Assembly: GCF_026571515.1 (NCBI RefSeq)
Contig: NW_026866030.1
Coordinates: 186,001 to 250,000, forward strand
Direction of reading: 5' to 3'
From: Ruditapes philippinarum
Lineage: Eukaryota
Length of the DNA stretch: 64,000 bases
This document shows positions 950 through 27,132 of the stretch, one piece after another (positions within the stretch are counted from its first letter, which is position 1; each line of letters starts with the position of its first letter). A program made the translations under genes and the position numbers. The notes beneath the pieces are model-generated. The model did not search any database. It was not told where the DNA came from and saw only the letters and a program-made list of their open reading frames with translations.

Positions 950-1489
950 ATTTCATTTGGAAATTTTTTTTCTGGGCCTTTTGATTAAACTGTTCTTCTT
1001 TTAACAAATCTAATATATCGCTTGGCCACCAACCCTTGAATTACCGGTTTTAATTAAGAAGTGAAATATTCAAAATCCTTTTTATAATACTTAAACTCCT
1101 TATCAGATTCCTCTGCAATCATTGGTCAGGCCCAGATTGGAATTACTCCCTATCTTCTTTTTTCCAATTTTCCATCTTTAATCCTTTAGTTAAATTATTT
1201 TTCATGTTAGAAACATTGCTAAATGTCATTCTTTTAGGTTTTTGCAGTACCAAGAACTTAGAATGTGTTTTATTATAATTTATATGTTAAAATTTTTCCA
1301 GGCTCCTCATTGTTTTCTACCCACTGGTCTCAATCTCAGAAAATAGATCCCAGGCTGTAAAGTTTATGAATTTTCCTGTACCAACATCCTCAGTGAGGAT
1401 GTATCCCTCGCATGTCTGAGCTAGGTCTGTGTCAGCCTCAGCATGAAGAAGTACTATGTCTCGCCGCCCTTCCCTTGTTAAGCTTGATT
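950..1489 (-). CDS. TIR-domain exon of copy 1 (frameshifted as assembled)
   Basis: ORF 1317-1547 contains RDIVLLHAEAD, equivalent to DFVILHTDDD and DFVIIHTKAD of the paralogs. Reading across indels at 1130-1210 gives HE.IILTKGLKDGK..KEDR.VIPIW, matching EIVLIRGLK...RDRVVPV. Acceptor AG at 1490-1491. Confidence 0.75.
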
Positions 1490-4400
1490 CTAAATATTTA
1501 AGAATTGAAAGTTTAAGAAAATATAAAAAATTCAACTTTACTATCATAGATAAAAAAGAAAGCTGAACATAGTTCTTTTAGACCTGGAAATGAACTATAA
1601 TTTTAGCATTGTCCTAAAAATGAGAATGACAATAAAAAGGCCTTACAGTCTCTAAAAAAGACAGTGTGGATAGTGATGAGGAGACTTTAAATGAGACAAT
1701 GTGCAAAACCTTAAACTGGCCTTTTAAAGTCCTGAATGCAGACTTCCTTTTGTCGTTAAATTTTTACATTAAACAGAATGAATCGCATACCTTAATCTAG
1801 TTATTGTGAAGTGCATACCTTAATCTAGTTATTGACTACTTTGATATGTGCATTCTATGCATCTTTAGCAGGTGATGTTGTTTTTAGCTCTGGTGTTGTT
1901 AAAAGTTTGTAACACCCAATGTTAGCCAAAATCAATTTTACTGTTTCAGCTCCTTATAACCTAAATTGTGAAACGAAAAAAAAAAAACAACAAGAAAAAT
2001 CCAATGAACCTGTAAGCATTACTTAGTTTGCCAATCTACGTAATCTACCAAATTGGTGAATATTGTTGCTGTTTTGGATAGAAGCTCTGTCTGACCATCA
2101 TTCGATGACATTGTGGATTGGTTCAGGGAAGTCTCTGTTGAGGACATTGGTTAGATAAATGTTGAAGAATTTCTGTGAAGAGGTTGTAGGAAACATTTGA
2201 AGGTGAAAAACAGTCAACTTCTGGAGGTGACAGGTTTGTCTGTGAGTTGATTCTGCCTCTGGTCTACTGTCTTCCCAATGAGCCAAGGTCATTCAAATGA
2301 CGGGTGGTGTTCTCTACTACTTGTTGGCATCTGTAAAAATGCAAGAAATATCTAAAAGTGGTTTAAGTTCAGGCTTAAATTGGAAAAGTGTTTTGCATAT
2401 TTAAGTGAATATGTCATACCAAAGAGTGATTAAAAACTATTTTTCTTTTAAAAAAATTCCCTTTATTTTTAATTAATACAAAATTCAATATTTAAGACTT
2501 TAAAGCTTTTCCTTCTTTGGGCATTTTCCAAAAATTAAATTGGGTTTAATATTTTTAAAAAAGTCATGGTTTTTATAGAAAAATTTTTTTATAGGTAAAT
2601 TTTAATTTTACCTAGGGTTTATCATTCAATAAAGGAAGTAAACAAATGGCTCTAAAATATTGTGTCAATCAAATTTTTACAGAAAAACTATTGCCAGGAT
2701 TTGAATGAAAATCGTCTGTAAGCCCAACACTGAGCTAAATAATTAGATTACAAGATTTAGTTTATACAGAATTTACTTCAGTTTCATTGTGTAGGAATCT
2801 ATAAGCTTACAGACACACTTTCGAATCCATTTCTGGAAGTAGCCAGTACTAAGCAATGAGTGTAAAGTTTTTAGGAAACTATGGCTTGCCCTTAAGGCGG
2901 TTCAAACCCACACCGGCAGCAATCCTTAAGTTCCTAGTCTAATGTGTAAACTAAACCACTTAGTCACATCACCATGATAGAATAAAGGTTAATCATTGAC
3001 ATTTTGATTTCAATTGTTTTGAAATGTAACAAGCTACATTTCTTACCTGTTTTTTGTTTTATTTGGAATTTTGGAAAATTTTTTATCTCTCAACCCCCTT
3101 TTTCCTTTTTGTTTTTTGTAAATTGGGGTAAATTAAAGGGGTTTAAAGATGATTGGGTTGGGAATTTTAAAAAAATTTTTTAGGGGTTACATTTTGTGAT
3201 GATAATGAAAGAAGATTTGGGGTTTATACTGATGGTATTTTGGTATGTGGGTTTTTTTGGTGATAAATCCCCTTGGGAATGATGCTTTTGGGTACTTTCA
3301 ATTTTGTTTTGATGAAATTTCTTTTTTGAATGAGCCCAAAATTTGCTTATTTTTAAAAGTGCAATGGAGATTTTTAAATTTTTGGCTCTTTTTTGTGATT
3401 TGAATCTTTTGGGAAATTGGGTTTTTTGCCCCCTCTTGTGAAACGCTTCAAAGAGCCCGTTGGGTTTTAATCTCTTTTTATTTTTAAACTCTTTTTTTCT
3501 TCATTTGAGGGCAGTGTTTCTCCATGGAATGGCTCAATTTATTTTTTTACAGTTTTCATGCCATGTTTTCTTTGTAGACTTTTAAAATATATTTAAGGTT
3601 GGTTGAAGATGAGTGTAAAAGGACATTGGTTTTCCTTGTATGGGCATTGGATTGTTCATTCATACATAGTTTGTCTCTCTTGGAGGCTTATCCCTTGTTG
3701 GCTTGAACTGTTGTTTCTGTTTAATGGGAACGACAGAAATGTTTAGTTTTGATCATTTTGATTATCTTGTTATATAATTTTGAAGTGTTTGGGTAGCTTG
3801 TATAAGTTCTCCGATGTTGTTGTTGAGGTGACTCAATACTGGTTGGGTTTGTTGATAATAAAAGAACAGCTGAAATTTCGATATACAGTTGGTGGTGTTT
3901 GGTAACACAGACAGCGCTGATTTTTGATATAGTTGTTGGTTGTGGTAACACAAGTGATTTGATTTTTGATATAGTTGATTGGTGTTGGTAAAAAACGTTG
4001 ATCTTTGAATTCAATATAGTTGTTGGTGTGGTAACACAGTGATCTGATTTTGATGTAGTTATCGTTGTGGTAACACCGTCATCTGGATTCGATATTGTTG
4101 CTGGTGTGGTAACACCGTCATCTGGGTTCGTTGTAGTTGTCGGTGTGGTAACACCGTCATCTGGGTTCGATGTTGTTGCCGGTGTGGTAACACCGTCATC
4201 TGGGTTGAATGTTGTTGCCGGTGTGGTAACACAGTTCATCTGGGTTCGATGTTGTTGCCCGGTTTGTGGTAACACCGTCATCTGGGTTTGATGTTGTTGC
4301 CGGTGTGGTAACGACCGTCATCTGGGTTCGATGTTGTTGTAGGTGTGGTAACACCGTCATCTGGGTTCGATGTAGTTATCGGTGTGGTAAACACCGTCAT

Positions 4401-5823
4401 CTGGGTTCGATGTTGTTGTAGGTTTTTGGTAACACCGTCATCGCTGGGTTCGATGTTTGTTGTCGTTGTGTGGTAAACGAGTCATCTGGGTTTCGATGTT
4501 GTTGTCGGTGTGGTAACACCGTATCTGGGTTCGATGTTGTCTTTGCCGTGTGGTAACAACCGTCATCTGGGTTCGATGTTTGTTATCGGTGTGGTAACAC
4601 GTCATCTTCGGGTTCGAATGTTGTTGTAGGTGTGGTAAACACCGTCATCCTGGGTTCGATGTAGTTTGTAGGTGTGGGTAACACCCGTCATCTGGGTTCG
4701 ATGTAGTTATCGGGTGTGGTAACACCGTTCAAATCTGGATTCGCATGTTGTTGTAGCTTTTTTGGTAACAACCGTCATCTGGGTTCGATGTTGTTGTTAA
4801 AGGTGTGGTTAACCGTCATCTGGGTTCGATGTCGTTATCGTTGTTGTATACAACCGTCATCTGGGTTCGATGTTGTTGATGGTGTGGTAACACCGTCCAA
4901 TCTTGGGGTTCGATGTTGTTATCGCTGTTTGGTTAACCACCGTCATCTGGGTTCGATTGTTGTTTGTTAGGTGTGGTAACAAACCGTCATCTGGGTTCAA
5001 AAATTTTAGTTGCCGGTGTGGGTCTAACACCGTTCATCTTGGTTCGATGTTTTGTTTCCTCAAGTGTTTTTTTGGTAACAACGTCATCTGGGTTTCGATT
5101 TTGTTATCCCGGTTTTTTTTGTGGTAACCACCGTCCATCTTTTGGGTTCGATGGGTTGTTGTAGGTGTGGTTAACACCGTCATCTTGGGTTCGATGTAGT
5201 TAATTCGGTTGTGGTAACACCGTTCATTCTGATTTTGATATGATTGTTTCAGTTGTGGTAACACTAACACTTGATTTCCATTGTTAGAAGTTGTTTTTTT
5301 TCTTGTTTAACACTGTCAAGCTTTAACCAGTTGTTGCTGATGAGATCGAAATTGTTTGTTCAGTCAATCTTATTAGCATCCAATACTATCTAGAGAATCA
5401 GAAATGTTGGTCGATGCTTTGATCTGTTTGGTCTGCAATTTCTCTCATTTTCAAGAATGGACCATTGGCTACCCTTATTGATTTAGGACTTGAATTCTCA
5501 CAAAAAGACTGGGAATGCAGTAATGTTGCATTTTCTTTGGAATGTTTTGGCAATTCTGTAGTTGATTTAGACTTTCTAAGAACAGCATTCTTATTCTTCC
5601 CTCTTTTTGTTATTAGTGAATTGTTTGTAAGGGTAGTATTACCAGTGTTACTTAAACCAGTCTGCCTGAAGTTTTGAACATTGCTTCTTGATATATCATT
5701 TTCTGTATTGTTTCTCTCAATGTCTTTTATTTGTTTAGGATCAATAGGAAGCTGTTGCTTATTTATCTCTTTTGATGCTTTGACATTCTCCTCTTTGTCC
5801 AGTGTTGCTTCATTTTCTGCCAT
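950..5823 (-). CDS. TIR-domain gene, cluster copy 1 (long N-terminal exon with mucin-like repeat, possible death domain, TIR exon); reading frame broken by many indels
   Basis: ATG 5823 follows an AG acceptor (5836-5837). The peptide GKNKNAVLRKSKS matches KKNKNANLRQSKS in copy 3. Putative exons: 5835-3047 (GT donor 3045-3046), 2330-~2022, ~1960-1850 and 1489-~950. Indels are dense over 160-5400, consistent with unpolished long-read sequence, so gene versus pseudogene cannot be decided. The 3' end is uncertain and may extend to ~540. Confidence 0.6.
2802..2975 (-). mobile_element. Degenerate SINE fragment
   Basis: ccagtactaagcaatgagtgtaaagtt...ggttcaaacccac...aaccact reads as a reverse-oriented tRNA-type head plus body; strongly diverged. 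Confidence 0.45.
3890..5270 (-). repeat. 39-bp coding minisatellite encoding TTP(A/T)TTSNPDDGV, about 30 copies
   Basis: Unit ggtgtggtaacaccgtcatctgggttcgatgttgttgcc. ORF 3721-4281 shows the 13-aa period. Confidence 0.9.
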
Positions 5824-6682
5824 TTTGTTTTCTGACTGGAAAAAAATGATTATGTTTTATTAGATAAAATAAATCATAATCAATTGTATTATCATTTATT
5901 ATATGTGATTTTATTGCATTAATGGAAAAAGGGTGAATGGGAATACCTTTTATCTTAGTTATCCCTTTTTGAATTTTCATTTCATGACCTGAAGGTTTCT
6001 AATTTACCTGATAATGATTTTTGTGTCCCCACTATAGGGGGGGGCATTTAGATTTACCCTTGTCAGTCTGTCCGTCCGTTCCCTTTTTTTGTCGCACGTA
6101 GCTCAAAAAGTTATTGACCTAGAGTCATGAAACCTTACAGAAATATTGATCAGCATGTGAAGTTGTGCACCTGGGTATTTTCATGTGGATATATTTATTA
6201 GTATTTTTATTGTTATTGCTCTTGACTTATTAAAATTTGCAATTTTTAACTTGTGTTGCAGGTAACTCAAAAAAGATTTGACCTAGAGTCATGAAACCTT
6301 ACTGGAATGTTGATAAGCATGACTGTGTAGTTGTGCACCTGGGTATTTTTGTATGGATATATTTAGTACTTTTAGAGTTATTGCCCTTAAATTAGTAAAA
6401 ATTTCCAATTTTCAACTTGTGTCGCACGTAACTAAAAAAGTATTAGACCTAGAGTCATGAAACCTTACAAGAATGTTGGTCAGCATGTGTAGTTGTGCAC
6501 CTTGATATTTTGTGCGGATTTTTTAAGTATTTTTAGAGTTATTTTCCTTGACTTAGTAAAAATTTCCAATTTTCAACTTGTGTCGCACGTAACTCAAGAA
6601 ATAGTTGACCTAGAGTCATGAAACCTTACAGGAATGTTGATCAGCATTTGTAGTTGTTCACCTTGGTATTTTTGTGTGGATA

Positions 6683-7419
6683 TTTTTAGCTCACTTGTCA
6701 CAAAGTGACAGGGTGAGCTTTTGTGATCGCTTTTCGTCCGGCGTCCGTCGGGTGTCCGTCGTCCGTTGTCCATAAACTTTTACTTTAAATGACATCTCCT
6801 CATAAACCACTAAGCCAATTTCATCCAAACTTCGCAGGAATGTTCCTTTGGTGGTCAACTTCTAGTGAGTGTCTACCAAGTTTGTTCAAATAAAAGCCCT
6901 GGGGTCAAAATTGGCCCCACGCCCTAGGGGGTCATTGATTTTCCCTATATGCATATAGTAAAAACTTAAAAATTCTTCTTTTAAAGAACCCAAAGAGCTA
7001 GAGTTTAGATATTAAGCATGAAACATCTTCTAGTGTCTACAAAGTTTGTTCAAATAAAAGCCCTGGGGTCAAAATTGGCCCCACCCCGGGGTTCATTGAT
7101 TTTCCTTATATGTGTATAGCAAAAACTTAAAAATCTTCTTCGAAAAATCCGAATAGCTAGAGTTCAGATATTAAGCATGAAGATTGTTCAAATAAAAGCC
7201 CTTGGGTCCAAACTGGCCCTGCCTCAGGTGTGTCATTGTTTTTAACTATATGTGTAAAGAAAAAACTTGACCAGCTAGACCTTAGATGTTTAGCATGAAA
7301 CATCTTCTAATGGGTGTCTACAAAGTTTGTTCCAATAAAAGCCCTGGGGTTAAAACTGGCCCCCCTACGGGGGCCTATATACAGGTGAGCGACTTCAGGG
7401 CCATCATTGCCCTCTTGTT
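6683..7419 (+). mobile_element. Nested non-autonomous element family B (ttttagctcac...gtgagcga...ctcttgtt)
   Basis: Interrupts a family A core in a T-run. Has a subterminal inverted repeat gctcac/gtgagc, a cgtc microsatellite, internal cores and a 3' hairpin. The host core resumes at ~7420. Confidence 0.8.
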
Positions 7420-7562
7420 TGTTTTTTTAGAGTTATTGCCCTTGACTTATTAAAAATTTACAATATTTAACTTGTGTTGCACGTAACTCAAAAAGTTTAT
7501 GACCTGTAGGCCTGAAAGTTTACAAGAATGTTGGTCAGCATGTGTACTTATGCACCTCGGGG

Positions 7563-8504
7563 TTTTTGTGTCGCCTCTACGGAGTAGTGGCGACATATAG
7601 GGATCACTTCTCCGTCGTCTGTCTGTCGGTCTGTGTCTGTCTGTCCGTCTGTCCGTCCGCCCGTCATAAAACTTGTCCGGACTACTCCTCATAAACTACT
7701 GGTGCAATTTCATCCAAACTTTACAGGAATGATCAGTACCAAGTCTAGTTGTGCATATTGTCAGCATTTTCCGGTTCAATGATTTTTGTCAGAGTTATAA
7801 TTTTTAATTTTAAAGTTTGTCCGTACTATTTCTCTTATACCACTAATGCAATTTCAATGAAACTTTACAGGATTGATCTGTAGCTCAAGTCCTTGCGCAT
7901 ATTGCAAGGGTTTTCCAGTTGAATGATTTTTGGCCGAGTTATGGCCCTTTGATAAAAAGGTTTCTTTTTCTGTGTGTTGCCAGATACACAAAAGCTTGTC
8001 CGGACTACTCCTCATAAACTACAGGTGCAATTTCATCCAAAGTTTACAGGAATGATCAGTACCAAGTCTAGTTGTGCATATTGTCAGCATTTTCCGGTTC
8101 AATGATTTTTGTTAGAGTTATGGCCCTTTAATAATTTTTATTTTTAAAGTTTGTCTGGACTACTTCTCTTATACCACTAATGCAATTTCAATGAAACTTA
8201 ACAGGATTGATCTGTAGCTCAAGTCCTTGCGCATATTGCACGGGTTTTCCGGTTGAATGATTTTTGGCTGAGTAATGGCCCTTTGATAAAAAGGTGTTTT
8301 TTTTCTGTGTGTTGCAAGATACGCAAAAGCTTGTCCGGACTACCCTCATAAACTACTGGTGCAATTTTATCCAAACTTTACAGGAATGATCAGTACCAAG
8401 TCTAGTTGTGCACTGTCCGTCTGTCTGTCCGTCTGTCACAAAATTTGTCCCAACATGAAATTGGCCATCATGAGGCGACACATGTGATTACTGATCGCTC
8501 TTGT
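7563..8504 (+). mobile_element. Nested non-autonomous element family C (ttttgtgtcgcctc...gaggcgacaca...ctcttgt)
   Basis: Inverted tgtgtcgcctc/gaggcgacaca, gtct/gtcc microsatellite and alternating tandem cores. A second copy lies at 33154-33690. Confidence 0.85.
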
Positions 8505-14257: not shown

Positions 14258-14434
14258 NNNNNNNNNNNNNNNNNNNNNNNNNNNNNNNNNNNNNNNNNNN
14301 NNNNNNNNNNNNNNNNNNNNNNNNNNNNNNNNNNNNNNNNNNNNNNNNNNNNNNNNNNNNNNNNNNNNNNNNNNNNNNNNNNNNNNNNNNNNNNNNNNNN
14401 NNNNNNNNNNNNNNNNNNNNNNNNNNNNNNNNNN
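14258..14434. other. Assembly gap (N run)
   Basis: 177 consecutive n. Confidence 1.
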
Positions 14435-15380
14435 TTTTCTATGACAATTGATCTTTGACATTGAGTCTAATGGTCGTTAATGTCTCTCACTTCTGTTTTA
14501 GAAATCATGATTGTGGGATAAGTAGTCAGTCACTTACAGAGAAATTGGTCATTTAACTGGTTAATTACTCAAGAATGCTGGACCGACAGCCAAGATATAT
14601 GACTAAAATATGTGTCAAATTTGAAAATTTGAAACCAGGCAATAACATTCATGAACAACTTTTGTCCTTGATGAGGCTTTATGAACAGAAGCTACAACTG
14701 ACAGTTTCAATGTTGCTGGATTGGACTTCTTAAAGGATCCTGTTTTTCTCTATTCAATCAAACCAATTAAGCCATCACCATGCCAATTTGCTACTGTTGG
14801 ATGGTCAAATTAAGGTCTAAGTTGTTCTGAATTGTCTGGTTCTAACCTGATCTGTTGAAAAAAATCCACTTGACAAATGACTGCTCTTTTAAATCTTGAC
14901 CAGTTTTTATAAGTCAAGATATAAGGTCAGATTTATTACATGTTGCTCATCTCTATATTTCTATATTATATTTCTATAAATTTGGTCTTGACCAAGGTAT
15001 GGTCTCAACATTAAGTCATACAAAAGTCTCTGCCTACAATGTATTCATAAAATCATTCATATAATATAATAATAATGCCAGTTTTAATGTACTTTAATAT
15101 ACAAATGTATAATTAGAAGCTGTCAAGCAAACTGTGTGGCTCCTGTGCTGGGGCACTATAACGAGTTGAATAAATTATGAAGGGTCAAAAACAAAAACAA
15201 TACATTCAGTATCATATAGAAATTTGATCGTAGTTTATTGCTATTCCTTTACTGAAATTCTTGTGTAAGATTAGTTATATCCAATTAAAAGTTGTTTTTT
15301 TTGTCTGCACCTTCTTAAAGTCATCAATAAACTATAGGCACAAGGAATTCCATTTAATCATTTATGGAAATTTTAACCGT

Positions 15381-15650
15381 GGCCGAGTCGTGGCCGAGTG
15401 GTTAAGGTTGTTAACTTCAAACCACTTGCCCCTCACCTCTGTGGGTTCGAATCCCAACAGGGACTTTTGATTCTTTCATGTGAGGAAGCTATCCAGCTAG
15501 CTTATGGAACTTTGGTGGTTCTACTCAGGTGCCTGTTTGTACCTGAAATAATGTATGGAAGGGCACCTGAGGTCTTCCTCCATCAGTAAAGCTGGACTGT
15601 CGGGATATGACCTATACTGTGTCGATGTGACGTAAAATCCAAAACGAACA
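15381..15650 (+). mobile_element. Full-length tRNA-derived SINE
   Basis: A box tggccgagtgg, B box ggttcgaatcc, body gtgaggaagctatccagctagc... and an aaac-type tail. Homologous copies at 25070, 59214 and 63635. Confidence 0.9.
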
Positions 15651-17424: not shown

Positions 17425-17835
17425 TATCCAAAAGCATTTATTTATATCCGTTTAATGTCCAAAGGTATGTATTTTATGCTCAAAGACATCCATTTAATAT
17501 CCAAAGCATTTTATGCTCAGAGGCATCCATTTGAATTATAATGTCCAAAGGCATCCATTTAATGACCAATGGTATGCATTTTATGCTCAAAGGCATTCCA
17601 TTTAATGTCCAAATGCATCTATTTAATGTCCAAAGGTATGCATTATATGCTCAAAGTCATCCATTTAATGTCCAAAGACATCCTTTTACACCCATTTCAT
17701 GCTCAAAGGCAATGTTCCAAGGCATTCATTCATATCCATCTAAGGTCCACAGGCATCCATTTAATGCTCAGGCATCTATTTAGTGTCCAAATGCATCCAT
17801 TTATATCCATTTAATGTCCAAAGGCATCCATTAAA
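17425..17835. repeat. Degenerate ~21-bp minisatellite
   Basis: Recurring atccatttaatgtccaaaggc; accounts for the ORFs at 17541-17814. Confidence 0.85.
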
Positions 17836-18261
17836 TGGCCCCTAATAATCAATGTAGCTATACAATCCTTTCCTTATTCATTGTTGGTAGGTAATACTGT
17901 TCTAATTAAGCCTGATGATACAGTAGTGACATCAGCTCAAGATATAATACTGTTAGAATATTGCATTGCTTTTTATTATGCCTCAAGAGAAACATTTTAT
18001 TCTTGTCTTTAAACTTGAGGTCACACTGCTGGTGACAGCCACTGTGCAGACCAAGATCAGCCCCCACATCTATGATGTCAGATCATGATCTTCATTTTTT
18101 GCTATTCAATCGGTACTTAGTTTATAATTTTCTTTTAAAATGATGAATTGTTTCCTGCAGGTCGAAAGATGAAGAAATCTGTTAAAGTATAGTAAAGGTT
18201 CAATATCACTATTTAAACACTTGTTTTTAATCGTTATCGTAGTAGTTGAAAAGTTGGTACC

Positions 18262-18906
18262 TTTTATTATGCCCCAACTATAGGGGGGCATTTAGATTTA
18301 CCCTTGTCCGTCTGTCCTTCCCTCAATCCATCCGTCCGTTCTCTTTTTGTGTCGTATGTAGCTCAAAAAGTAATTGACCTAGAGTCATGAAACCTTACAG
18401 GAATGTTGATCAGCATGTGAAGTTGTGCACCTGGGTATTTTCATGTGGATATATTTAGTATTTTTAGAGTTATTGCCCTTGTCTTAGTAAAAATTTGTAA
18501 TTTTCAACTTGTGTCGCACGTAACTAAAAAAATATTTGACCTAGAGTCATGAAACCTTACAGGGATGTTGATCAGCATGTGAAGTTTTGCACCTGGGTAT
18601 TTTTGTGTGGATATATTTTGTATTTTTAGAGTTATTGCCCTTGAATTAGTAAAAATTTACAATATTCAACTTATGTTGCACATAACTCAAAAAGTATTTG
18701 ACCTGTAGGCCTGAAAGTTTACAAGAAGTTGGTGTTTTCTTGGGGATTTATTCAGTATTTGTCGTATTTGCCCTTTACTTAATAAAAGATTTTTAGATTT
18801 CAGCTTGGGCACATGTAGCCAAAAAAAAAAATTTGACCTAGAGACATAAGATTGACAAATTGGTGGAGTGTGGGGGCACCCATGTCCTATGGACACATTT
18901 CTAGTT
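18262..18906 (+). mobile_element. Family A tandem-core element
   Basis: Same termini and cores as 6017-8662. Ends about 40 bp from the stop codon of TIR copy 2. Confidence 0.85.
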
Positions 18907-18947
18907 TAAATGTACCTTTTATGTTAATATTCCACAAGTTCAAAATA

Positions 18948-20555
18948 TTATGGAAATTTTACTCTTCCCATTTTAAAAAGACTTTTGACACTGTTAAGAT
19001 AAGCCTCTCTGAGGGAAGGTTTTGTAGACTTGAAATTAAAGTACCTTAAACTAGTTATACAACAAAGAACTTGGTCTTCATATTGACAACCTGTTAATAC
19101 AGGTACAACCCTATCTCTTTTTTCATCGTTATTTTTCTGGCCTTTTTCATTTTTCAGACCACGTATTAGTACTATTTCATTTATGAATTGCGTATACCAA
19201 TCATCTTCAAGGTTATCTGTCACAAATATCAAAATGTATCTAAAAGAATCGTGAAGAGTTGCTGCCTTTCGCAATTCAGATTTCCCAAGGCCAACATTAT
19301 CAAATGTCTCTACTGTGAGGTTGGAGATTCCAAAATCATTGTGTAAATGTTTCTTGAAGACTTGTACTCCTTCTGAATCAGCTTTTGTATGAATGATGAC
19401 AAAATCTTTCATATGCCCTGAAAATACAGGTTATTTTTGAAAATATCAAGTTGTTTTTTAGATATACATGTATTTTCAAACTGTGAGGTATGATAAATTA
19501 ACAGTTCTGGAGTGGGATAAAAGATTCAAAATGGAATGGACATCTAGATGCTATTAAGAGAAAGTGGCTTTGCAAAACCCTCTTTGGAACAATTTTGGAG
19601 TTACTGTTCTTTGTAATTTTTTGTAAGAGCATAATTTTAGTATCATCATGAATAGATGGATAGATATTTTTTGGACAAGTACAATACAGATGAACCAATA
19701 CAGAGATTTTATGCATTATTTTAGAGTTATTGACCTTTAAAATATTAATTTATTTTCATGATAAGTTTTTGTTTGAAATATAATAACTTGGAGACTACAT
19801 AATTATAGGGATTTGATTTCAGAATTTCAGGTTTTTTTTTCTAGCATCAGTTCCAGTTTACAAATTTAGAATATAATACCTTGCGATTTAGGTTGGATAG
19901 AAGATGCTGCCATACTGTAGCTGGATACTGACTTGTAAGATGGGGTTGTATTAAAATTTGGACCATTTCCATTTGGTCCATGGTTTTCAGAAATTTCAGT
20001 ATTTTTCAGGTCAGTTGGAAATGTACTTTTTTTTACATCACTTTTAACAGGGTGAATCCTGGCTCCTTTTCCTCTGTTATTTTTATTTTCTTTTTTTGTT
20101 TCACTTTGCACCTGATCCTTTGGAATCACAGAAACTGGTTGCGTACAACAGTGTTCTAATGATTGACCAACTTCATCACAGCCGTTTTGATCTGATGGTA
20201 ATTCTTGACCTTCTTCATCAGTTATTTCTAGACATTCAAATTCATTTTCAAATCTCTTATCACTGCCTTCAGAATCAGTATCACTGCCAGGGTTACCATC
20301 CTCTTCAAGTAAAGATACTTGTGTGTTTAATACATCCTTGTTGTCATTTGACAAAGGTGTACTTGTATCAGACTGAATGTTTGATTGTCTAATATTGCTT
20401 TTGTTATCTATTACTTTTGAGCATTTATTGTCTTCCGTAGATTTTTTTTCACTCGTGTTGTCAGGAACTAGTTCAGTCTTATCCCCAGATGATTTGATGT
20501 TGAGAGCTGTTTGCTCAGTCTCAGTCACTGTCTCAGTCACAGTTACTGTTGCCAT
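18948..20555 (-). CDS. TIR-domain protein, TICAM/TRAM-like, cluster copy 2 (intact, 381 aa)
   Basis: Exons 20555-19880 and 19417-18948 are joined by a phase-1 GT-AG intron, giving 1146 nt open. Acidic low-complexity N-terminus. C-terminal DFVIIHTKAD...LHNDFGI...ILIFVTDNLEDDWY...RVVPVL follows the TIR pattern of TICAM2 (FVILHAEDD...LQDDFGI...ILLLTENFLRDTWC...VIP). Confidence 0.88.
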
Positions 20556-20694
20556 TTAGTATTGATCAGTGAACAACATGAATTATAGTGTCTACAAAGC
20601 AAAAATAATATAACAGTTATAGAAATGCATTTGTAAAATGTAAAAGTTTTGTAGATTTTGAAAGGTGTTAATGCCTTTTATATGGTACACTTTC

Positions 20695-21640
20695 TTTTAA
20701 TACGCCCTTTTGAAAAACAGGTCTTATACTTTCCCCCCCTGGCAGACGGGCTGTTTGTTGGTTGGGCGGGCATACTGCGTCCAATTTTGTCTGGAGCATA
20801 TCTATCCATGCATTGAGGAATTTTTAATGAAACTTCATTGAAATGTTCACCAGTGTCAGAAGCTATGTCACACACATAAACCAAGTCTCTAGGTCGAAGG
20901 TCAAGGTCACACTTAGAAGTCATTGAAAATGCTTATCTGGAAAAAAACTTCTACATGCATAGAGGGATTTCAATGTAACTTGGCACAAATGTTCCCGTGC
21001 AAAATTCAAGTGCCTGTGGCCAAGGTCAAGGTCACACATAGGGATCAAAGTTCAGATAAAAATATGAAAATGTGTATTCAGACCATTTAGTCATCATATA
21101 TTGTGGGATTGAACCACAAATGGTCATTTGTTTGTTTGTTTGTTTCAATTTACGCCTTTTCCCAATATAGGCGGATAGTTTCCTAACCATCGTTCCTGGA
21201 GAGTTACACCAGTACTAGACCACATTCCTCCCTGCTAAACTACTTGGGATCGAACCCATGCCAGAGAGGTAACTGGATTAGAAGTCATCGACTTTAACCA
21301 CTCGACCACGGAGGCGGTTACAAATGGTCATTACTATGACTATCATTGTGAATCTTAGTATTGCGCACATAATTTAGGTCCCTGCTACCAAAGTCAAGGT
21401 CCCATAGAGAGGTCAAAGTTTGTGTATGGGGACCGCATTTAGTCATCATTTATTGATGGATTGTAACTCAAGTGTGACACATGTAATTTAGGTTAGTATT
21501 TGCAAGGTCAAGGTCACTAGAGATAATAAAATATTCAGATATTTTTTGGATATTGACCAGAGCATATCTCCTATATGTATATCTATAATGCCCAAAGCTT
21601 TGACGACGGGTGTATTTTGCGACAATGTTGCCCTTTTTCA
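20695..21640 (+). mobile_element. Degenerate tandem-core non-autonomous element (caaggtca-rich) with a nested SINE
   Basis: Starts ttttaatacgccc with a ggtt/gggc microsatellite. Segment 21371-21640 is homologous to 34715-35010. Confidence 0.6.
21127..21316 (-). mobile_element. tRNA-derived SINE (second family)
   Basis: ttgt tail, reverse B box ggatcgaaccc, reverse A box accactcgacca. A homologous head lies at 39941-40010. Confidence 0.75.
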
Positions 21641-24093
21641 AGAATATGGACTGCACATTGTGCTCTAAGGTTTGTACATCTATCAACAGCAGGAATGGAA
21701 CCAACATCATGGGTGAGAAAAGGAAGTGAATCAAACATAATCCTGATCGTTGGAGGCATACCACTTCTTACCCTGTCAATTCTCCCCGACTGGTACCCCT
21801 TCCCACACCACACTTACACCTTTAACCTTACAATCTGCATTTATTGTTTGGAAATTTAATTATAAATTTACACATGTTTTGTCATACATGTACTAAAACT
21901 AAAATAGTTATGTAAACTAGTACATTATAATTGTGTTTTGACTTTTCATAATCTGACGAAATAAAAAAAATTTAAGATTCTTTTTTGTCCCACAATAAAT
22001 TAGCAGCTATTTAAAAAAAGAAATACATATGTATTTAATAACAATAGATAAATTGTAAATAAATAACTGACATACCTTTTCTTTAAAAGTTCCATTTGTA
22101 ATAAATGTGTATATATTCTTTCATTTACTTGAATGGTTTATACAGGAAACTGGTGTTTGAGAGTTTATTTTATTGCCTGCATAAATTTTGCATACAAACT
22201 TCAAGAGTTTGTTGACACAAGATATATCGCATAATAGGGAAACCATTATAGTTATAAAAATAGAGTTTGAACGGTTCTATAAATAGAAATTAAGGAAATC
22301 CAAATGTGCTACTTAATATAGGTAAACTCTAAATCATTAAATATTTTAAATTGACTACAACTAAACCTGGCAGATTTACCTGTCAATGCATTTCTCTACA
22401 TTGTTGTCGAGATCTATACTGAGCTTTAACTGGAGGCTCATTTAAAGATTTTTGACATAAATATTTAATAAACCCTTTGGCAGCTAGAACTGAAAGTGAC
22501 TATCCTATATAAGCCACCAGCTAGTACGGTATATAGCCAGGCCAACCGACATTTCCATGGAGTCTGATTAGGCTCTTTACTGTCGGTAGCAAAATTTTAG
22601 TATTTTGATGCTGAAAGCCCTTTTAAGGTTCAAATGTACTGTTCCAAATTAAAAGATGGAAAAGTCCATCAATGCATTAAGTCTTCAGGTTAATAAAAGG
22701 TTAAATGCCAATATGCCTAAGCACTGTCATAGAGACTTCTCAAAACAAGCTAGGATTTTCGAAAATTATTTTTTCTGTACTAAACAAGCTACAGATGATT
22801 ATATATTTCCATAAATGACTTCAGTTTTGACACCAGGGGACCCATAAAATTCAACTTGACAAATTTCCAGGATATTTGGACTGAAAATGTTTCAAAAAGT
22901 GTTAACAAGGTTTTTCCTTGACCTAGAAATCATCTAAACAACCTTTTTGACCAATTTCCAGGATATTTGAACAGAAACAATAGCCCCTAGAGTGTTAACA
23001 AGTTTTTTTCATATTTGGGCTGTGTTACCTTAAGTTTTTTTGACCCAGGGTGAACCATATAGAAATCATCAAAACAACCTTTCAGGCCAATTTCCAGGAT
23101 AATTGGACAGAAACAGTAGCCACTGGAGTGTTAACAAGATTTTTCTATTTTTTATGACCTAGTTTTTCATCCGAGATGATTCATGTTAGAACTTATCTGA
23201 TCAATTACTTGGAGAAACATTCTGACTAAGTTTGATTACAATTGAAGCAAAAATGTGACCACTACAGTGTTAATGCACTAAATAAGGACAGACGACTAAA
23301 AGCTCAACATCAGCCAGCCCAGCTGGTGAGCTTAAAAAAAAAAGAAGGAAACAGTCCAGAGAATGACTGGTACTTTTTAATTTAAATTAGCATTCATCCA
23401 ATCATTTAAGAATTGAAGAATAAACCTCAAATTGTTTATTTGTAACACTATCGGAAATTTTTCTATATAAACAAAGAAGGCCCAAAACGTGCAGTATTCT
23501 ACAACAATGCACTCGCCGTTCTTATTATCTCCCTGTGTATTTTATTCACATTGAGGGCGCCATTTTGTTCAAGTTCTTTCAAATAGCATCAGAATTTTTT
23601 CTGCCTAAATATAAGGGCAATTTCTACTCGATGCTCTTGATTCTTATATTCATGTTTTTTGAAAATGTTACATCTTGTAGATCAAGCTTATCATATAACG
23701 ACCCGAGGTCTTCGTTTACATTTTAGGAAACATGACTTTCTCCGGTTCATCTTCATATGAAGAGTACTTCGTCAATGGCTACACAATTTAAACAACAGAG
23801 ACTTGCTGTAGAGAAATCAAACGTTGCTTTCACAAGAAAAGTAGACAGTTTAGAGAAAAATCTCCAGGTTGACTTTTTTTTAGTTTACAAAAATGGTTTA
23901 TTTATGATTCAAACTCACTTTGTTAAATCATAACAGGCAAAAGTTCATTAAATTTCCATTTTGAATGGGACAGACTCTAGGGAAAAGTATAATTGAATAT
24001 ATTTTGAGAACAAGACAAACCCAATAAGGTGCAATATTAAATATTATTTTATTACAGAAATAAACAAGAGATAAATTTATTTTTAGACTTGCT

Positions 24094-24548
24094 TCAAGGA
24101 AATTTAGCTCTCCCTGTTTTAACAAGATTTTTTACACAGTTAACATATGATTCACTCATGAGAGTGCTATTTGAACGGAAATTGAAATATTGTAGTCCAC
24201 CAAGTATACTTAGTTCTATAATGTTACAGTAACCTCTTCTGGTTAATACTGGCACTACTCTTTCTTCTTTCCCATTTGCTTCCCGTAGACCTAATGTCAA
24301 CACAATTTCATCCAAGTACCTACAATATTTATCACTTTCAAGATTCTTTGTTACATATGTCAAAATGTATCTATAATTATCATGTAAAGTTGCCAAACTT
24401 TGCATCCCAGGTTTTCCTGCATCAATGTTACTGAGCAAATCTACAGTAAGGTCTGGTATCCCAATGTCTCTTTGAAGATGCTCCATAAAAGAACCTGCAG
24501 CTTCCAGATCATCATCAGTGTGAAGAATGACAAAGTCTGACATTCCAC
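24094..24548 (-). CDS. TIR-domain exon of copy 3 (open frame)
   Basis: GMSDFVILHTDDDLEAA...YILTYVTKNLESDKYC...RVVPVL...GRAKFP is collinear with the copy 2 TIR. Acceptor AG at 24549-24550. Confidence 0.88.
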
Positions 24549-25069
24549 CTGAAATTGGTAAGAACAAAAAAGTTTTCATTAGTCTTAGTGTAAATTTGTT
24601 CATGCAGAAACACTAGCGAGATTCTTAAATGAAACAATCTAAGTCAAGTACAATGATAATTTAACGTTTAAAATAAATATTAGTGTTTAAAATAAATTTC
24701 CTTTCATGGTTTAAAACCCATATTTGGCTAGAAGAAAAAAGGAGAAAAAAAAACAAGAAGGAAAAAGAAAAAAAAGGAGCATGTAACTGTAACACTCTAA
24801 TTAGAATCGCCCTTCCATAGGTTTGATGTTTTTAACATGCTGCAAAATTCTTAGAGATTGAAAAAGAAATTCAGTTTTCTAAATCATTATTGGTTGCATC
24901 ATAATTGGTTGCAAAAAGAATAAGCTAGCAATAATTCTGTTGTGAAAAGCAAACTGTTAAATGATATTCCTGATTTTGATAAGACAGAGTTGCTTTGCAT
25001 ATTCATTTCAACTAAGGAATTGATCGTAAATCATATTTTCTAAAGAATACTGTCAGAAATTGATAAATC

Positions 25070-25319
25070 AGGTCGTTAACTTCAAACCACTTGCTCTTCA
25101 CCGCTGTGGGTTCGAATCCCGACAGGGACTTTGGATTATTTCATGTGAGGAAACTATCCAGCTAGCTTATGGAACGTCGGTGGTTCTACTCAGGTGCCCG
25201 TTAATGCCTGAAATAATGCACGGAAGGGCACCTGAGGTCTTCCTCTACCAGTAAAGCTGGAACGTTGCGATATGACCTATACTGTGTCGATGTGATTTAA
25301 AACCCAAAACAAACAAACA
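25070..25319 (+). mobile_element. 5'-truncated tRNA-derived SINE in the intron of TIR copy 3
   Basis: Closely matches 15405-15650; B box ggttcgaatcc. Confidence 0.9.
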
Positions 25320-27132
25320 TTGGTCAGAAACCAGTAAAGAATATATACTGACCAATGAAAGTCCTTAGATTTGAGTCAGAACTCGAGGCCTGGACTTACT
25401 TAATAAGGGTAAAAAAAACTACTGGACTACTTACGTCTTGAACAAGAAGACAGGGAAGATGCTGTAATGCTTAAAGCTAATGAAGATTCTCCACTCAGTT
25501 CTGGATTAACTCGTAAGTATTGTGCTTGAGATCTTTCTCCATCTATTTCTGTTTGTTCAGGCACCCTTTGATCTGATAGGTGACTCTGGAATACGTGGCA
25601 TTCTGGTTTTTCAGGGACAGGCTGTATCCTGTTCTGTTTGAATTTAACTTTCCTTTTAACATCATACACTTGAGTAGCGGTTGGTACAGGCACTTTTGGT
25701 GTACAATAAAATGGTGGTTGGCACTGGAACTGAATGAAGGACTGCGATAATCTGAGCCTTTTGCTTCTTCACAAACCTTTGGTGTTGTTTCTTCCAACTC
25801 AAGCTTAAGTAATGAATCAAGTGACATCCAATTGCTAGAACCTATAGCACTGTCTGTTTCACCATCAACTTCTGCCTTTGAAACTTGTGCTTCATAGGCA
25901 TGCTGATCTTTGGCCTGAGGTTCTTCAAGTTTTGTTTCTAAGTTTTCACAACTCTGTGCAGATTTTGATTGCCTTAAATTGGCGTTCTTGTTCTTCTTCC
26001 ATTTTTGAATAATTTAATTCAGGGCTATTTTCAGAATTCTGATTGGTTTTGTGTTCTGAAGACTTTATAATAACAGAGCTGGTTTCTGACTTTGTTCTTT
26101 GTTCAGATTTGGTAAATGTGATGGTTGCCATTGTTGATATATCCTGTAAAAGAAAACAAGTCTGCTGTAAGTATATCATAATTGTCATCAGATAAAGGCA
26201 TGTGTATATTAATTATTACTCCACACTTATGTATAAAAATTATAGATTTTATTACATATAGAACCTCTATACTTTATTTCATGGCATTGGTGATGGAAAT
26301 GTAAATAGAACCACTAATAATCTTCAGAAAACTATCAAGATAGCTCTTTCACATATTTTTGTCAATATTACTTAGCAGAACTGATTAACTTGTCAGAGAT
26401 GTCTGGGGGGAGGGTGCATGCATGTCATTTTCCAACTGTTTCAAAGCCGGAAAAAAATCTCTAAAATGGGTCAAACCCTCCATACTGAGTGAATTAGTAA
26501 GGGTAACATAAATTGAACCCACAACTGACATCTTGAAGTCATGCACTAAATTAATAGGGGACGTTTGCATAAATTGGAAAATTTTGTAGATTTTTATTCA
26601 TTATTCTGATTTATAGCTTAAGTGTGGAACTGAAATATATGCAGACAGTTTTTACTTATTACAAGTTGAATCTTTAAATGAGGTCATGTACGTAGTTAAA
26701 CTATTAACATTTGTCAGAGAGACATCAGTGTAATGTTTGGATGAGTGATGAAAATGTCTGTAAGAAAAGCATTTTAACTTAAAAATATTTTACAACAATG
26801 ACAATGTAACCCCCCCCAAAAAACATGTTATTACCTGAAATGAAAGTTCCCATTTTAATTTTTAAGTCTGTTAATACATGATTTGTGAATTATTCCTCCT
26901 TTTAAAGTTTTATGTGTATAGTACAGTTGTAGATCTACAGCAGTTGTACAGGTTAAACATTTGTTGGGAACCCAAATTACACAACTGAATGGGATCCCTA
27001 ACATTTTGTTTCTTTAAATAGAGTGAATAAATGTTGAAAAGGATATGTCTGTAATGTTTTGAAAAAGAAATTTTACCTGTAAGTATGATCAGTTATGTCT
27101 AAATCTTACTTCTTTTTCAATAAAAATGGTCT

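What the first reader, a model, noticed from the sequence alone, without database searches (positions are those of the whole stretch)
950..26131. Tandem cluster of three TICAM/TRAM-like TIR adaptor genes with fast-evolving disordered N-termini in an invertebrate
Seen: three same-strand paralogs share a terminal TIR exon and short N-terminal motifs (MAT.T.T...IKSS; KNKNA.LR.SKS; RI.PV), while the remaining sequence has diverged strongly. Known: the FVILH..DD/L..DFGI/IL..T.N...D.WC/V.P pattern is that of TICAM1/TICAM2, which are best characterised in chordates; bivalves have expanded cytosolic TIR families. Inference: this is a lineage-specific, diversifying innate-immune adaptor or effector family with no LRR or transmembrane segment. 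It is the best candidate here for an undescribed system.
Basis: partly seen in the sequence, partly recalled or inferred. Interest (0 to 1): 0.8.

Follow-up and report, generated by a model that had tools for sequence, protein, structure and literature searches.

The report
Clam TRAM-like TIR adaptor gene cluster
A Manila clam gene cluster encodes cytosolic immune-type adaptor proteins whose TIR domain most resembles vertebrate TRAM and TRIF; two copies are intact, one is decayed, and none has been tested experimentally.

Summary
The window is Ruditapes philippinarum contig C14517:186001-250000.

- **Gene B (18948-20555, minus strand)** is intact. It matches RefSeq XP_060573133.1, "uncharacterized protein", piece by piece.
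- **Gene C (24094-26131, minus strand)** is transcribed and spliced as predicted. One of its two frameshifts is an assembly error, contradicted by all 4 read sets. The other is probably one as well.
- **Gene A (about 966-5823)** has a decayed TIR exon: a stop after about 50 codons and 34 small indels against its intact tandem paralogue D, 21 kb upstream of the window.
- **The N gap (14258-14434)** lies between A and B and touches no exon.

The terminal exon models as a TIR fold (pLDDT 82.5). Its nearest solved relatives are:
- human TRAM by sequence profile (E 3.9e-12, against about 1e-6 for MyD88);
- human TRAM by Foldseek;
- TRAM and TRIF by VIA-align (Z 16.7 and 15.6, against 13.5 for MyD88).

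All 19 named relatives among 30 looked up are bivalve proteins. One is already named "TICAM2-like" by NCBI, and clam and mussel transcriptome papers list TRAM hits. I found no sign of diversifying selection (dN/dS 0.14-0.54). TICAM orthology was not tested by phylogeny.

Verdict: new members of a known kind, of moderate interest.

The parts
19880..20555 (-). Gene B, coding exon 1 (ATG at 20555). It encodes 225 full codons plus the first base of a split Gly codon. The region is disordered and rich in S/T/N/E/K.
   Evidence: Its translation equals residues 1-225 of RefSeq XP_060573133.1 (P0001). It lies on the disordered side of the charge-hydropathy boundary, and the maximum Kyte-Doolittle 19-residue window is 0.18.
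19418..19879 (-). Gene B intron (GT...AG, phase 1).
   Evidence: Donor context CAAG|GTATT and acceptor context TTTCAG|GGCAT.
18948..19417 (-). Gene B terminal TIR exon (stop codon at 18948-18950).
   Evidence: The translation of 18951-19415 equals P0001 residues 227-381. It is 47% identical to the gene C TIR exon.
25435..26131 (-). Gene C N-terminal coding exon (ATG at 26131). As assembled it is read in three frames.
   Evidence: Open frames. An RNA contig of 947 letters covers 25433-25999 and continues directly at 24546. The copy on C6706 and the independent protein P0106 are open in a single frame.
25999..26001 (-). Probable assembly error: one extra G (ATGGAAG here, ATGAAG in the C6706 copy). 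It causes the first frame change in gene C.
   Evidence: Two RNA contigs (147 letters over the 148 positions 25980-26127) and one DNA contig of X3 (281 letters over 282 positions) each carry one gap. The exact place was not displayed.
25718..25719 (-). Assembly error: one base is missing from the assembly. It causes the second frame change in gene C.
   Evidence: read laying reports 'put in behind 25718 G' at X1 3.96 of 3.96, X3 36.4 of 36.4, X17 20.2 of 20.2 and X24 3 of 5 reads. The C6706 copy has the base.
24549..25434 (-). Gene C intron (GT...AG, phase 1). It holds a high-copy SINE-like repeat at about 25030-25450.
   Evidence: The RNA contig joins 25433 to 24546; the GT is ambiguous by 2 bases. 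Read depth there is 1e5-1e6. The same element occurs at 15377-15586.
24094..24548 (-). Gene C terminal TIR exon (stop codon at 24094-24096).
   Evidence: Pfam TIR_2 E 1e-4. AF2 model pLDDT 82.5. TRAM is the top structural match. It is covered by the spliced RNA contig.
5401..5823 (-). Gene A exon 1 (MAENEATLDKEE...KRGKNKNAVLRKSKS...). It is still an open frame of 141 aa.
   Evidence: It is 56% identical over 136 aa to exon 1 of the paralogue D.
3724..5306 (-). Gene A Thr/Pro-rich coding minisatellite (39-base unit, about 25 copies at 4019-5055). As assembled it is open only in pieces.
   Evidence: Tandem Repeats Finder. Open frames. It is colinear with D's TTPTTTSKSGDGVS repeats.
966..1500 (-). 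Gene A remnant of the TIR exon. The first 90 columns are identical to D. A stop follows at 1317-1319, and the rest is broken by 29 small insertions and 5 deletions.
   Evidence: Pairwise alignment to D's TIR exon gives 425 of 540 columns identical. In the genome, only this stretch itself and D match it.
14258..14434 (.). Assembly gap (177 N) in the spacer between gene A and gene B.
   Evidence: No long open frame abuts it and no family similarity lies near it.

Best explanation
The locus is part of a tandem cluster of bivalve-specific genes for soluble TIR-domain adaptor-like proteins in Ruditapes philippinarum.

ARCHITECTURE
- Each intact gene has one long exon for a disordered N-terminal region of about 225-240 residues.
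- That region carries conserved short motifs: MAT.T.T; IKSS; a polybasic NKN..LRKSKS; xE[VI]DG; [KR]I[QH]PV; SSL..CSR.
- A phase-1 intron follows, then a terminal exon for a TIR domain of about 150 residues.

GENES
- The window holds intact gene B (RefSeq LOC132731049).
- It holds gene C (LOC132731061), whose apparent frameshifts are largely or wholly assembly errors. They have distorted the RefSeq model.
- It holds gene A, a decayed duplicate of an intact long, repeat-rich member (D) 21 kb upstream.

TIR DOMAIN
- Among solved structures, the TIR is closest to the vertebrate TLR adaptors TRAM (TICAM2) and TRIF (TICAM1), ahead of MyD88.

INFERRED MECHANISM (not shown here)
- The C-terminal TIR joins activated receptor TIR domains, such as those of the many bivalve TLRs, by homotypic TIR-TIR assembly, as TRAM and MyD88 do.
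- The disordered N-terminus supplies docking, localisation or cleavage motifs for downstream partners.

SHOWN HERE: gene structures, splicing of C, low-level transcription, TIR fold, relative similarity to TICAM TIRs, a distribution in which every named relative is bivalve, and purifying selection.
For: IDENTITY AND GENE MODELS
- P0001 = XP_060573133.1 [Ruditapes philippinarum] sits on a contig of 533,831 bases. It equals the two B exons piecewise.

SPLICING AND TRANSCRIPTION
- An RNA contig of 947 letters in run X17 joins 25433 to 24546.
- Raw RNA reads of X24 cover the C exons at depth 0.4-4.4 and B exon 1 at about 2, with about 4% of the run read.

TIR DOMAIN
- AF2 gives pLDDT 82.5 and pTM 0.81.
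- Foldseek ranks TRAM 9dlg and 9dki first and second (E 3.8e-5 and 6.3e-5).
- VIA-align gives TRAM Z 16.7 (rmsd 2.2, 135 aligned), TRIF 15.6, TRAM 14.4, TRIF 14.1 and MyD88 13.5.
- The 21-sequence family profile against PDB sequences gives TICAM2 E 3.9e-12 (49.6 bits), MyD88 about 1e-6 (32 bits) and TICAM1 7.4e-5 (25.9 bits). No TLR, TIRAP or SARM1 chain appears at E up to 10.
- The protein atlas lists a chordate 'TICAM2' cluster at score 0.88, which is a lead only.

FAMILY RANGE
- 62 representatives of 1.84 billion reach E<=1e-3.
- Of 30 looked up, 19 carry names, and all 19 are bivalves.

ORTHOLOGY WITHIN VENERIDAE
- C groups with Mercenaria P0002 (support 99/97).
- D groups with Mercenaria P0003 (100/95).
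- B groups with the C6706 B-like copy (100/99).

SELECTION
- dN/dS is 0.14 for the TIR and 0.45 for the N-terminus between C and its C6706 copy.

ARCHITECTURE
- No other Pfam domain was found in 10 of 10 full-length relatives.
- There is no hydrophobic segment.

MOTIFS
- The strict NKN motif stands N-terminal to the TIR in P0002, P0003/63/64, P0016, P0020 and P0036, and in A, C and D.
Against: - No function was tested. Induction by infection was not examined.
- No phylogeny with TICAM, MyD88, TIRAP and SARM1 reference sequences could be built, because the tools gave me no such sequences.
- Pfam TIR_2 is below its gathering score for C (23.2 against 28 bits) and is not detected for B.
- The 2-sequence profile listed no protein known to be a vertebrate TICAM among its 62 hits; 11 of the 30 looked up, and the 32 not looked up, carry no name known to me.
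- The structural margins over MyD88 are modest: about 1 to 3 Z units.
- Features of TRAM and TRIF outside the TIR are absent. The proteins start MAT, MEN or MAE, so there is no Met-Gly start. Pfam found no TRIF N-terminal domain or RHIM. The B/C-type proteins have no L.IS motif and no P.E..[FWYDE] motif.
- A Glu at the position that I recall as catalytic in NADase TIRs is present in 15 of 21 family members, so an enzymatic role is not excluded.
- B was not seen in the RNA contigs of X17 (depth 0 at 20250-20649). The X24 reads on B carry 7 or more differences.
Confidence: 0.6

Rival explanations
1. The proteins are negative regulators or decoys. Their TIR caps or competes with productive TIR assemblies, as short MyD88 isoforms do, and the fast-changing N-terminus has no signalling output.
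For: No known effector-recruiting domain or motif was found. A paper on oyster truncated MyD88s acting as a 'plug' appeared in a search listing (PMC7381170, title and abstract start only). B's TIR evolves fast (dN/dS 0.54 against the B-like copy).
Against: The N-terminal region keeps a chain of conserved islands across venerid species and is under purifying selection (dN/dS 0.45). That argues it does something specific.
Confidence: 0.2
2. The TIR is an NAD+-cleaving enzyme of the SARM1, plant or bacterial type, and the proteins are effectors rather than adaptors.
For: A Glu at the position that I recall as catalytic (E80 of the C TIR exon, in ...LDEIVL...) is present in B and C and in 15 of 21 family sequences. 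SPARTA and SARM1 TIRs appear among the structural matches (Z 11-13).
Against: The Glu is not invariant: 6 of 21 have V, Q, A or H. The adaptor TIRs (TRAM, TRIF, MyD88) rank above every NADase TIR in all three comparisons. No SARM1 chain reached E 10 with the family profile.
Confidence: 0.08
3. Gene A is really an intact third gene, and its breaks are assembly errors like those in gene C.
For: The assembly demonstrably contains single-base indel errors in gene C. The indels in A are strongly biased towards insertions (29 against 5), as in uncorrected long reads (my recollection of error profiles). A's exon 1 is still open.
Against: A differs from D by 10-20% mismatches in every 100-base bin but one (1400-1499, no mismatch), in exons and introns alike. 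Indel density in the exons equals that in the introns, which is the pattern of neutral decay. 34 indels in 540 columns is far above the 2 in about 700 seen in C. No second copy of A exists in the assembly.
Confidence: 0.12

Closest known systems
TICAM2 / TRAM (vertebrate TLR4 bridging adaptor)
   Same: It is the best sequence-profile match among solved structures (E 3.9e-12) and the best Foldseek and VIA-align match. The TIR is at the C-terminus behind a non-globular N-terminal region. A basic motif stands in the N-terminal part. NCBI already names one family member (Dreissena, P0051) 'TICAM2-like'.
   Different: There is no Met-Gly start, so no N-myristoylation signal. The N-terminal region of 225-240 residues (over 560 in the D type) is much longer than I recall for TRAM. 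Identity in the structural alignments is only 18-20%. Named family members are all bivalves, and papers treat TICAMs as chordate or gnathostome inventions (PMC7075850 and PMC9334734, passages). Orthology is untested.
TICAM1 / TRIF
   Same: TRIF TIR structures rank 2nd and 4th by VIA-align (Z 15.6 and 14.1). The profile match has E 7.4e-5.
   Different: Pfam found no TRIF N-terminal domain and no RHIM. The B/C-type proteins have no L.IS motif. The TIR is terminal, not central.
MyD88
   Same: It is a TIR adaptor with a C-terminal TIR. It is the second-best sequence family (E about 1e-6) and has Z 13.5.
   Different: Pfam found no death domain in B, in the Mercenaria orthologues of C and D, or in D's middle exon. 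Sequence similarity is weaker than to TICAM2.
Expanded bivalve TIR-domain-containing (TIR-DC / ecTIR-DC) families (Gerdol et al. 2017, Dev Comp Immunol; recalled and cited by PMC6321704; the paper is not held)
   Same: These are bivalve cytosolic TIR proteins without LRR or transmembrane segments, in multi-copy and lineage-specific sets, proposed as alternative adaptors.
   Different: I could not read that classification. I cannot say whether this family is one of its named groups.
A second bivalve TRAM-like TIR family (P0052 type; clam copy at G000:C13818:15458-16519)
   Same: It also hits TICAM2 best among PDB sequences (E 1.9e-6). Gene C is the third-best match to it in the clam genome.
   Different: Its TIR is near the N-terminus and has a ...DKWCEF... 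box. A long C-terminal tail follows. The clam copy is matched within one open frame of 581 aa.

Membership tests
TIR domain superfamily | TIR fold (parallel beta-sheet flanked by helices) | tested here: met
   AF2 pLDDT 82.5, pTM 0.81. The listed Foldseek and VIA-align matches are overwhelmingly TIR domains, with a few related SEFIR domains; the best is TRAM at Z 16.7.
TIR domain superfamily | Significant sequence match to TIR models | tested here: met
   The family profile against PDB sequences gives TICAM2 E 3.9e-12, MyD88 about 1e-6 and TICAM1 7.4e-5. Pfam TIR_2 alone is below its cut-off: 23.2 against 28 bits for C, and no hit for B.
TICAM2 / TRAM | TIR domain closer to TICAM2 than to other TIR families | tested here: met
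   TICAM2 is top by profile (17 bits above MyD88), top by Foldseek and top by VIA-align. The comparison covers solved structures only.
TICAM2 / TRAM | Orthology shown by a TIR phylogeny with TICAM1/2, MyD88, TIRAP, SARM1 and TLR references | not tested
   No reference sequences could be obtained through the tools. Two protein searches did not return TICAM2.
TICAM2 / TRAM | N-terminal myristoylation signal (Met-Gly; feature recalled) | tested here: not met
   B, C and Mercenaria P0002 start MAT. D and A start MAE. P0003 starts MEN.
TICAM2 / TRAM | Bridges an activated TLR to TRIF | not testable with these tools
   This needs binding and reporter assays.
TICAM1 / TRIF | TRIF N-terminal helical domain and C-terminal RHIM | tested here: not met
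   Pfam gave 0 families at E<=0.01 for P0001, P0002 and P0003.
TICAM1 / TRIF | pLxIS motif for IRF3 recruitment (feature recalled) | tested here: not met
   The regex L.IS has 0 matches in P0001, P0002, P0107, P0106 and P0109. Among the 13 proteins scanned, the only match is LYIS in P0012.
MyD88 | Death domain N-terminal to the TIR | tested here: not met
   Pfam found no Death domain in 10 of 10 full-length relatives or in D's middle exon.
SARM1-type NADase TIR | Invariant catalytic Glu (position recalled) | tested here: inconclusive
   Glu is present in 15 of 21 aligned family sequences, B and C included. V, Q, A or H stand there in 6.

The most novel reading that the evidence does not exclude
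Bivalves keep a true TICAM-type adaptor lineage. On this reading the TIR of this family, and of the second P0052-type family, shares a specific common ancestor with vertebrate TRAM and TRIF. The TICAM-type TIR would then predate chordates, and these genes would be the missing MyD88-independent adaptors of the very large bivalve TLR repertoire. The conserved N-terminal motifs (polybasic NKN..LRKSKS and two xE[VI]D-G sites that look like caspase sites) would be their localisation and regulation switches.
Probability: 0.25. Interest if true: 0.7.

Novelty: new member of a known kind. Interest (0 to 1): 0.4.

Why it matters
Reviews and surveys state that TRIF and TRAM arose in chordates and that molluscs lack them (PMC7075850 and PMC9334734, passages). 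Yet bivalves have a very large and diversified TLR repertoire (PMC10279657, title and abstract start) and components such as TRAF3, TBK1 and IRFs (PMC3308963, passage).

A defined, expressed gene family whose TIR is closest to TRAM and TRIF gives concrete candidates for MyD88-independent signalling in bivalves. These can be cloned and tested.

On the practical side:
- Single-base assembly errors distort the RefSeq model of LOC132731061. It loses the conserved basic motif and carries 15 wrong-frame residues.
- The locus differs strongly between contig C14517 and the short contig C6706. The B-position gene has only 57-59% TIR identity between them.
- That difference matters for studies of immune-gene presence/absence variation in clams.

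Tried and rejected
D's corresponding intact exon and the Mercenaria orthologue P0003 give no Pfam hit. The stretch is Ser/Thr-rich low complexity. Rejected.
- **Diversifying selection.** All pairwise dN/dS values are below 1. Site models were not run because there are too few close sequences.
- **Fetching vertebrate TICAM2 for a reciprocal search and a phylogeny.** The profile search found only family members (21 hits among 1505 candidates). A search with Mytilus P0034 found 2 hits among 75 candidates. Abandoned.
- **The gap as a hidden exon.** No support.
- **TRAF6 and pLxIS motifs.** Absent from the B/C-type proteins.
- **Literature for a described bivalve TICAM family.** Seven searches found three things:
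  - a 'weak hit for TRAM' in Mytilus edulis (PMC3308963, passage);
  - TRAM listed among Manila clam haemocyte transcripts (PMC3334963, passages);
  - a figure legend listing TRAM/TICAM2 for Chlamys farreri (PMC12521104, passage).
  Gerdol et al. 2017 is not held.
- **Supplements.** I did not ask for them. The contig tables of PMC3334963 and PMC3308963 and Supplemental Fig. 3 of PMC7075850 could show whether the published 'TRAM' contigs are these genes.
- **Gene A.** No reads were laid on it and its transcription is unknown.
- **Status of C6706.** Whether it is the other haplotype or a duplicated locus is undecided. It is colinear with the window at 72-93% identity.
- **Synteny in Mercenaria.** This rests only on a shared contig and near-consecutive accession numbers. 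Not tested.

Full report
**Where we are.** The window is G000:C14517:186001-250000 of a 1.41-Gb assembly in 15,874 contigs. The best database match to the TIR exons, P0001, is XP_060573133.1, [quoted passage not shown]. It lies on a contig of 533,831 bases, which is the length of C14517. The organism is therefore the Manila clam.

**The gap, tested first.**
- The only N run is 14258-14434, 177 letters. It lies between gene A (up to about 6022) and gene B (from 18948).
- In the six frames, no stretch stays open for more than 22 codons next to the gap on either side. The two 1-kb flanks share only 11-base chance matches.
- tblastn with all family exons found nothing better than E 1.4 within about 400 bases of it.
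- It touches no exon of the family. It does mean that the A-to-B distance and adjacency rest on scaffolding.
- I did not fill it or look it up elsewhere.

**Gene B (intact).**
- The ATG is at 20555.
- The coding exon runs to 19880 and ends on the first base of a split codon. The donor context is CAAG|GTATT and the acceptor context is TTTCAG|GGCAT.
- The TIR exon is 19417-18951, with the stop at 18950-18948.
- Translated piece by piece, without joining, 20555-19881 equals P0001 residues 1-225 and 19415-18951 equals residues 227-381. The split codon gives Gly226.

**Gene C (intact in nature, damaged in the assembly).**
- The ATG is at 26131.
- As assembled, the N-terminal exon is read in three frames:
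  - MATITF...NYSK;
  - KKNKNANLRQSKS...SSSA;
  - PPFYCTPK...SCSR.
- The donor follows at 25434-25433 and the acceptor at 24550-24549. The intron phase and position are the same as in B.
- I laid four runs on 20250-26249 (4 of 4 laid): X1 and X3 (DNA contigs), X17 (RNA contigs) and X24 (raw RNA reads, about 4% of the run read).
- A 947-letter RNA contig of X17 lies on 25999-25433 and continues at 24546-24178. This is the predicted GT-AG junction; the GT can be placed on either side.
- At 25718 all four runs put in one base:
  - X1: 3.96 of 3.96;
  - X3: 36.4 of 36.4;
  - X17: 20.2 of 20.2;
  - X24: 3 of 5 reads.
  The second frame change is therefore an assembly error.
- The first frame change is an extra G at about 26000, ATGGAAG here against ATGAAG in the C6706 copy.
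- Two X17 contigs (147 letters over 148 positions, 25980-26127) and one X3 contig (281 letters over 282 positions) each carry one gap there. The indel table showed only 12 of 30 rows and did not list the place, so this error is likely but not proven.
- Independent support comes from three sources:
  - The copy on C6706 is open in one frame for 241 codons from its ATG.
  - A JGI record, P0106, is 92% identical and is also a single frame.
  - P0082, from a contig of the same length (2718 letters), carries the matching TIR and is 97% identical.
- The RefSeq model for C (P0108, LOC132731061, 298 aa) skirts the errors. It jumps from ...KSEQRT to NKRLRLSQSFIQFQCQPPFYCTPK... It loses about 110 residues, including the basic motif. 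It also contains 15 residues (KRLRLSQSFIQFQCQ) of the wrong frame upstream of 25718.

**Gene A (decayed) and gene D (outside the window).**
- Window 156-6022 is colinear with C14517:164179-168730 at 72-87% identity over exons, introns and a coding minisatellite.
- That upstream gene, D, has three recognisable parts:
  - an open exon 1, MAENEAILDKEE...KGKNKNAVLRKSKS;
  - long TTPTTTSKSGDGVS repeats;
  - an intact TIR exon in an open frame of 175 aa.
- A's exon 1 (5823-5401) is still open and is 56% identical to D's.
- A's TIR exon is identical to D for the first 90 aligned columns. It then accumulates 29 small insertions and 5 deletions in 540 columns (425 identical). A stop follows ...DLFSEIETSG.
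- Mismatches run at 10-20% per 100 bases, and indel density is similar in exons and introns. This is the pattern of neutral decay. The identical patch at 1400-1499 looks like a conversion tract.
- The genome holds no other copy of this stretch.
- The insertion bias, together with the proven errors in C, leaves a minority chance that part of the damage is artefact. No reads were laid there.

**Other copies.**
- The B+C profile finds 9 places in the genome at E<=0.01: B, C, D, two on the 35.8-kb contig C6706, and four distant ones.
- C6706 is colinear with the window in reverse:
  - the flanks are 89-92% identical;
  - the C gene is 88-93% identical;
  - at B's position stands a gene, P0107 (LOC132752507), whose TIR is only 57-59% identical to B's and whose N-terminus is C-like.
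- C6706 is either a very divergent second haplotype or a duplicated locus.

**What the terminal exon is.**
- Pfam gives only a sub-threshold TIR_2 hit for C (E 1e-4, 23.2 against 28 bits) and nothing for B.
- A single-sequence search of PDB sequences gives human TICAM2 as the top hit: E 0.011 for C and 0.74 for B.
- I built a 21-sequence alignment of TIR exons and TIR-only relatives (A2). Its profile matches:
  - TICAM2 at E 3.9e-12 (49.6 bits);
  - MyD88 at about 1e-6 (32 bits);
  - TICAM1 at 7.4e-5 (25.9 bits).
  No TLR, TIRAP, IL-1R or SARM1 chain appears up to E 10.
- The AF2 model from A2 has pLDDT 82.5 and pTM 0.81.
- Foldseek puts the two TRAM TIR structures first (E 3.8e-5 and 6.3e-5; TM 0.62-0.73), then MyD88, MAL and TRIF.
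- VIA-align re-ranking gives TRAM Z 16.7, TRIF 15.6, TRAM 14.4, TRIF 14.1 and MyD88 13.5. TLRs and SPARTA score about 12-13 and SARM1 about 11.
- The protein atlas lists a chordate "TICAM2" cluster at 0.88, which is a lead only.
- It is not shown to be orthology. I could not obtain reference sequences for a phylogeny and typed none from memory.

**The family.**
- The 2-sequence profile finds 62 representatives of 1.84 billion at E<=1e-3, 20 at 1e-10 and 5 at 1e-30.
- Of 30 looked up, 19 have names, and all 19 are bivalves: Ruditapes, Mercenaria, Mactra, Mya, Dreissena, Sinanodonta, Potamilus, Mytilus, Pecten and Tegillarca. The other 11 are unnamed.
- Nearly all are called "uncharacterized". 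[quoted passage not shown]
- In a TIR tree of 29 rows:
  - C groups with Mercenaria P0002 (support 99/97);
  - D groups with Mercenaria P0003 (100/95);
  - B groups with the C6706 B-like copy (100/99).
  On this tree the C and D lineages predate the Ruditapes-Mercenaria split.
- Some more distant members (Mytilus, Potamilus) have an N-terminal hydrophobic anchor instead.
- A second family (P0052 type, with the TIR near the N-terminus) also hits TICAM2 best (E 1.9e-6). It has one clam copy, on C13818.

**N-termini.**
- They lie on the disordered side of the charge-hydropathy boundary.
- About 70-76% of their residues are S, T, N, Q, E, K, D, P, G or R.
- They have no hydrophobic 19-residue window above 0.95.
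- Pfam finds no domain in them.
- They are not random. Seven venerid sequences align throughout via conserved islands: MAT.T.T, IKSS, KKNKNA.LRKSKS, AEVDGE.DSAIGSS, SLDSLL, PPF.CTPK.PVP, [KR]I[QH]PV, EIDG and SSL..CSRG.
- The strict NKN motif recurs in Mercenaria and Mya members.
- xE[IVLFM]DG occurs in 7 of 13 proteins scanned.
- Between C and its C6706 copy, dN/dS is 0.14 in the TIR and 0.45 in the N-terminal exon, at dS of about 0.09-0.10. For B against the B-like copy it is 0.54 in the TIR.
- This is relaxed constraint, not demonstrated positive selection.

**Expression.**
- C is present as a spliced contig in X17 (word depth about 20).
- C exons are covered at depth 0.4-4.4 in the sampled X24 reads.
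- B exon 1 has depth 0 in X17.
- B exon 1 has depth about 2 in X24, from reads with 7 or more differences. These probably come from another allele.
- Induction was not tested.

**Literature.**
- Surveys state that TRIF-like TIRs are chordate-only and found no TRAM group (PMC7075850, passages).
- An Aplysia study found no TICAM orthologues (PMC9334734, passages).
- Philipp et al. 2012 report "one weak hit for TRAM" in Mytilus edulis (PMC3308963, passage).
- Moreira et al. 2012 list TRAM among Manila clam haemocyte transcripts (PMC3334963, passages).
- The resemblance has therefore been glimpsed but never analysed or tested.
- Gerdol et al. 2017, the main bivalve TIR classification, is not held and may already name this family.

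**Mechanism and verdict.**
- The best-supported reading is a bivalve family of soluble TIR adaptor-like proteins with a TRAM/TRIF-like TIR.
- They would act through homotypic TIR assembly downstream of TIR receptors, with the disordered N-terminus carrying the partner, localisation or cleavage motifs. This part is inferred, not shown.
- The decoy and NADase readings remain possible.
- The finding is real and partly mis-described. It is a new member of a known kind and is moderately interesting as a concrete candidate for MyD88-independent signalling in bivalves.

Noticed in passing
window 25718 and about 26000; RefSeq LOC132731061 (P0108): Single-base assembly errors distort the RefSeq protein model of gene C. 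The model skips about 110 residues and carries 15 wrong-frame residues.
   Followed up: yes
G000:C6706 (35,783 bases) against window 15677-44440: This short contig is colinear with the window in reverse at 72-93% identity. About 12 kb (window 28641-41065) is absent from it, and the gene at B's position is very different. It may be a divergent haplotype, showing presence/absence variation, or a duplicated locus.
   Followed up: partly
G000:C14517:164179-168730 (21 kb upstream of the window start): Intact paralogue D of gene A. It has TTPTTTSKSGDGVS mucin-like repeats and an intact TIR exon, and it is orthologous to Mercenaria LOC128552781.
   Followed up: partly
G000:C13818:15458-16519: A second kind of TRAM-like TIR protein, matched within one open frame of 581 aa, with the TIR near the N-terminus and a DKWCEF-type box. 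It is 45% identical to the unnamed P0052.
   Followed up: partly
window 43960-47417: AT-rich satellite with a 37/74-base unit and about 46-92 copies (GC 0.22-0.24).
   Followed up: no
window 35488-36198 (-): An ORF of 236 aa with a ...GVIDGTHIRIQAP...LLGDSGYPCKKWLL... pattern. From memory this looks like a PIF/Harbinger (HARBI1-like) transposase fragment. Not searched.
   Followed up: no
window 20650-21650, 22850-23850, 25050-25450; also 15377-15586: Very high-copy repeats (word depth 1e3-1e6 in DNA and RNA runs) lie between B and C and inside C's intron. The intron element is shared with 15377-15586 and looks SINE-like.
   Followed up: no
window 1400-1499 against C14517:165350-165449: A patch of 98-100% identity between A and D sits inside an otherwise 72-80% identical duplicate. 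It may be a gene-conversion tract at the TIR exon's 5' end.
   Followed up: partly
window 20250-20649 against 24050-26249, run X3: Word depth over B exon 1 (about 15-17) is roughly half that over the C exons (about 34-50). This would fit B being present on one haplotype only in that individual, but depth is a poor measure here.
   Followed up: no
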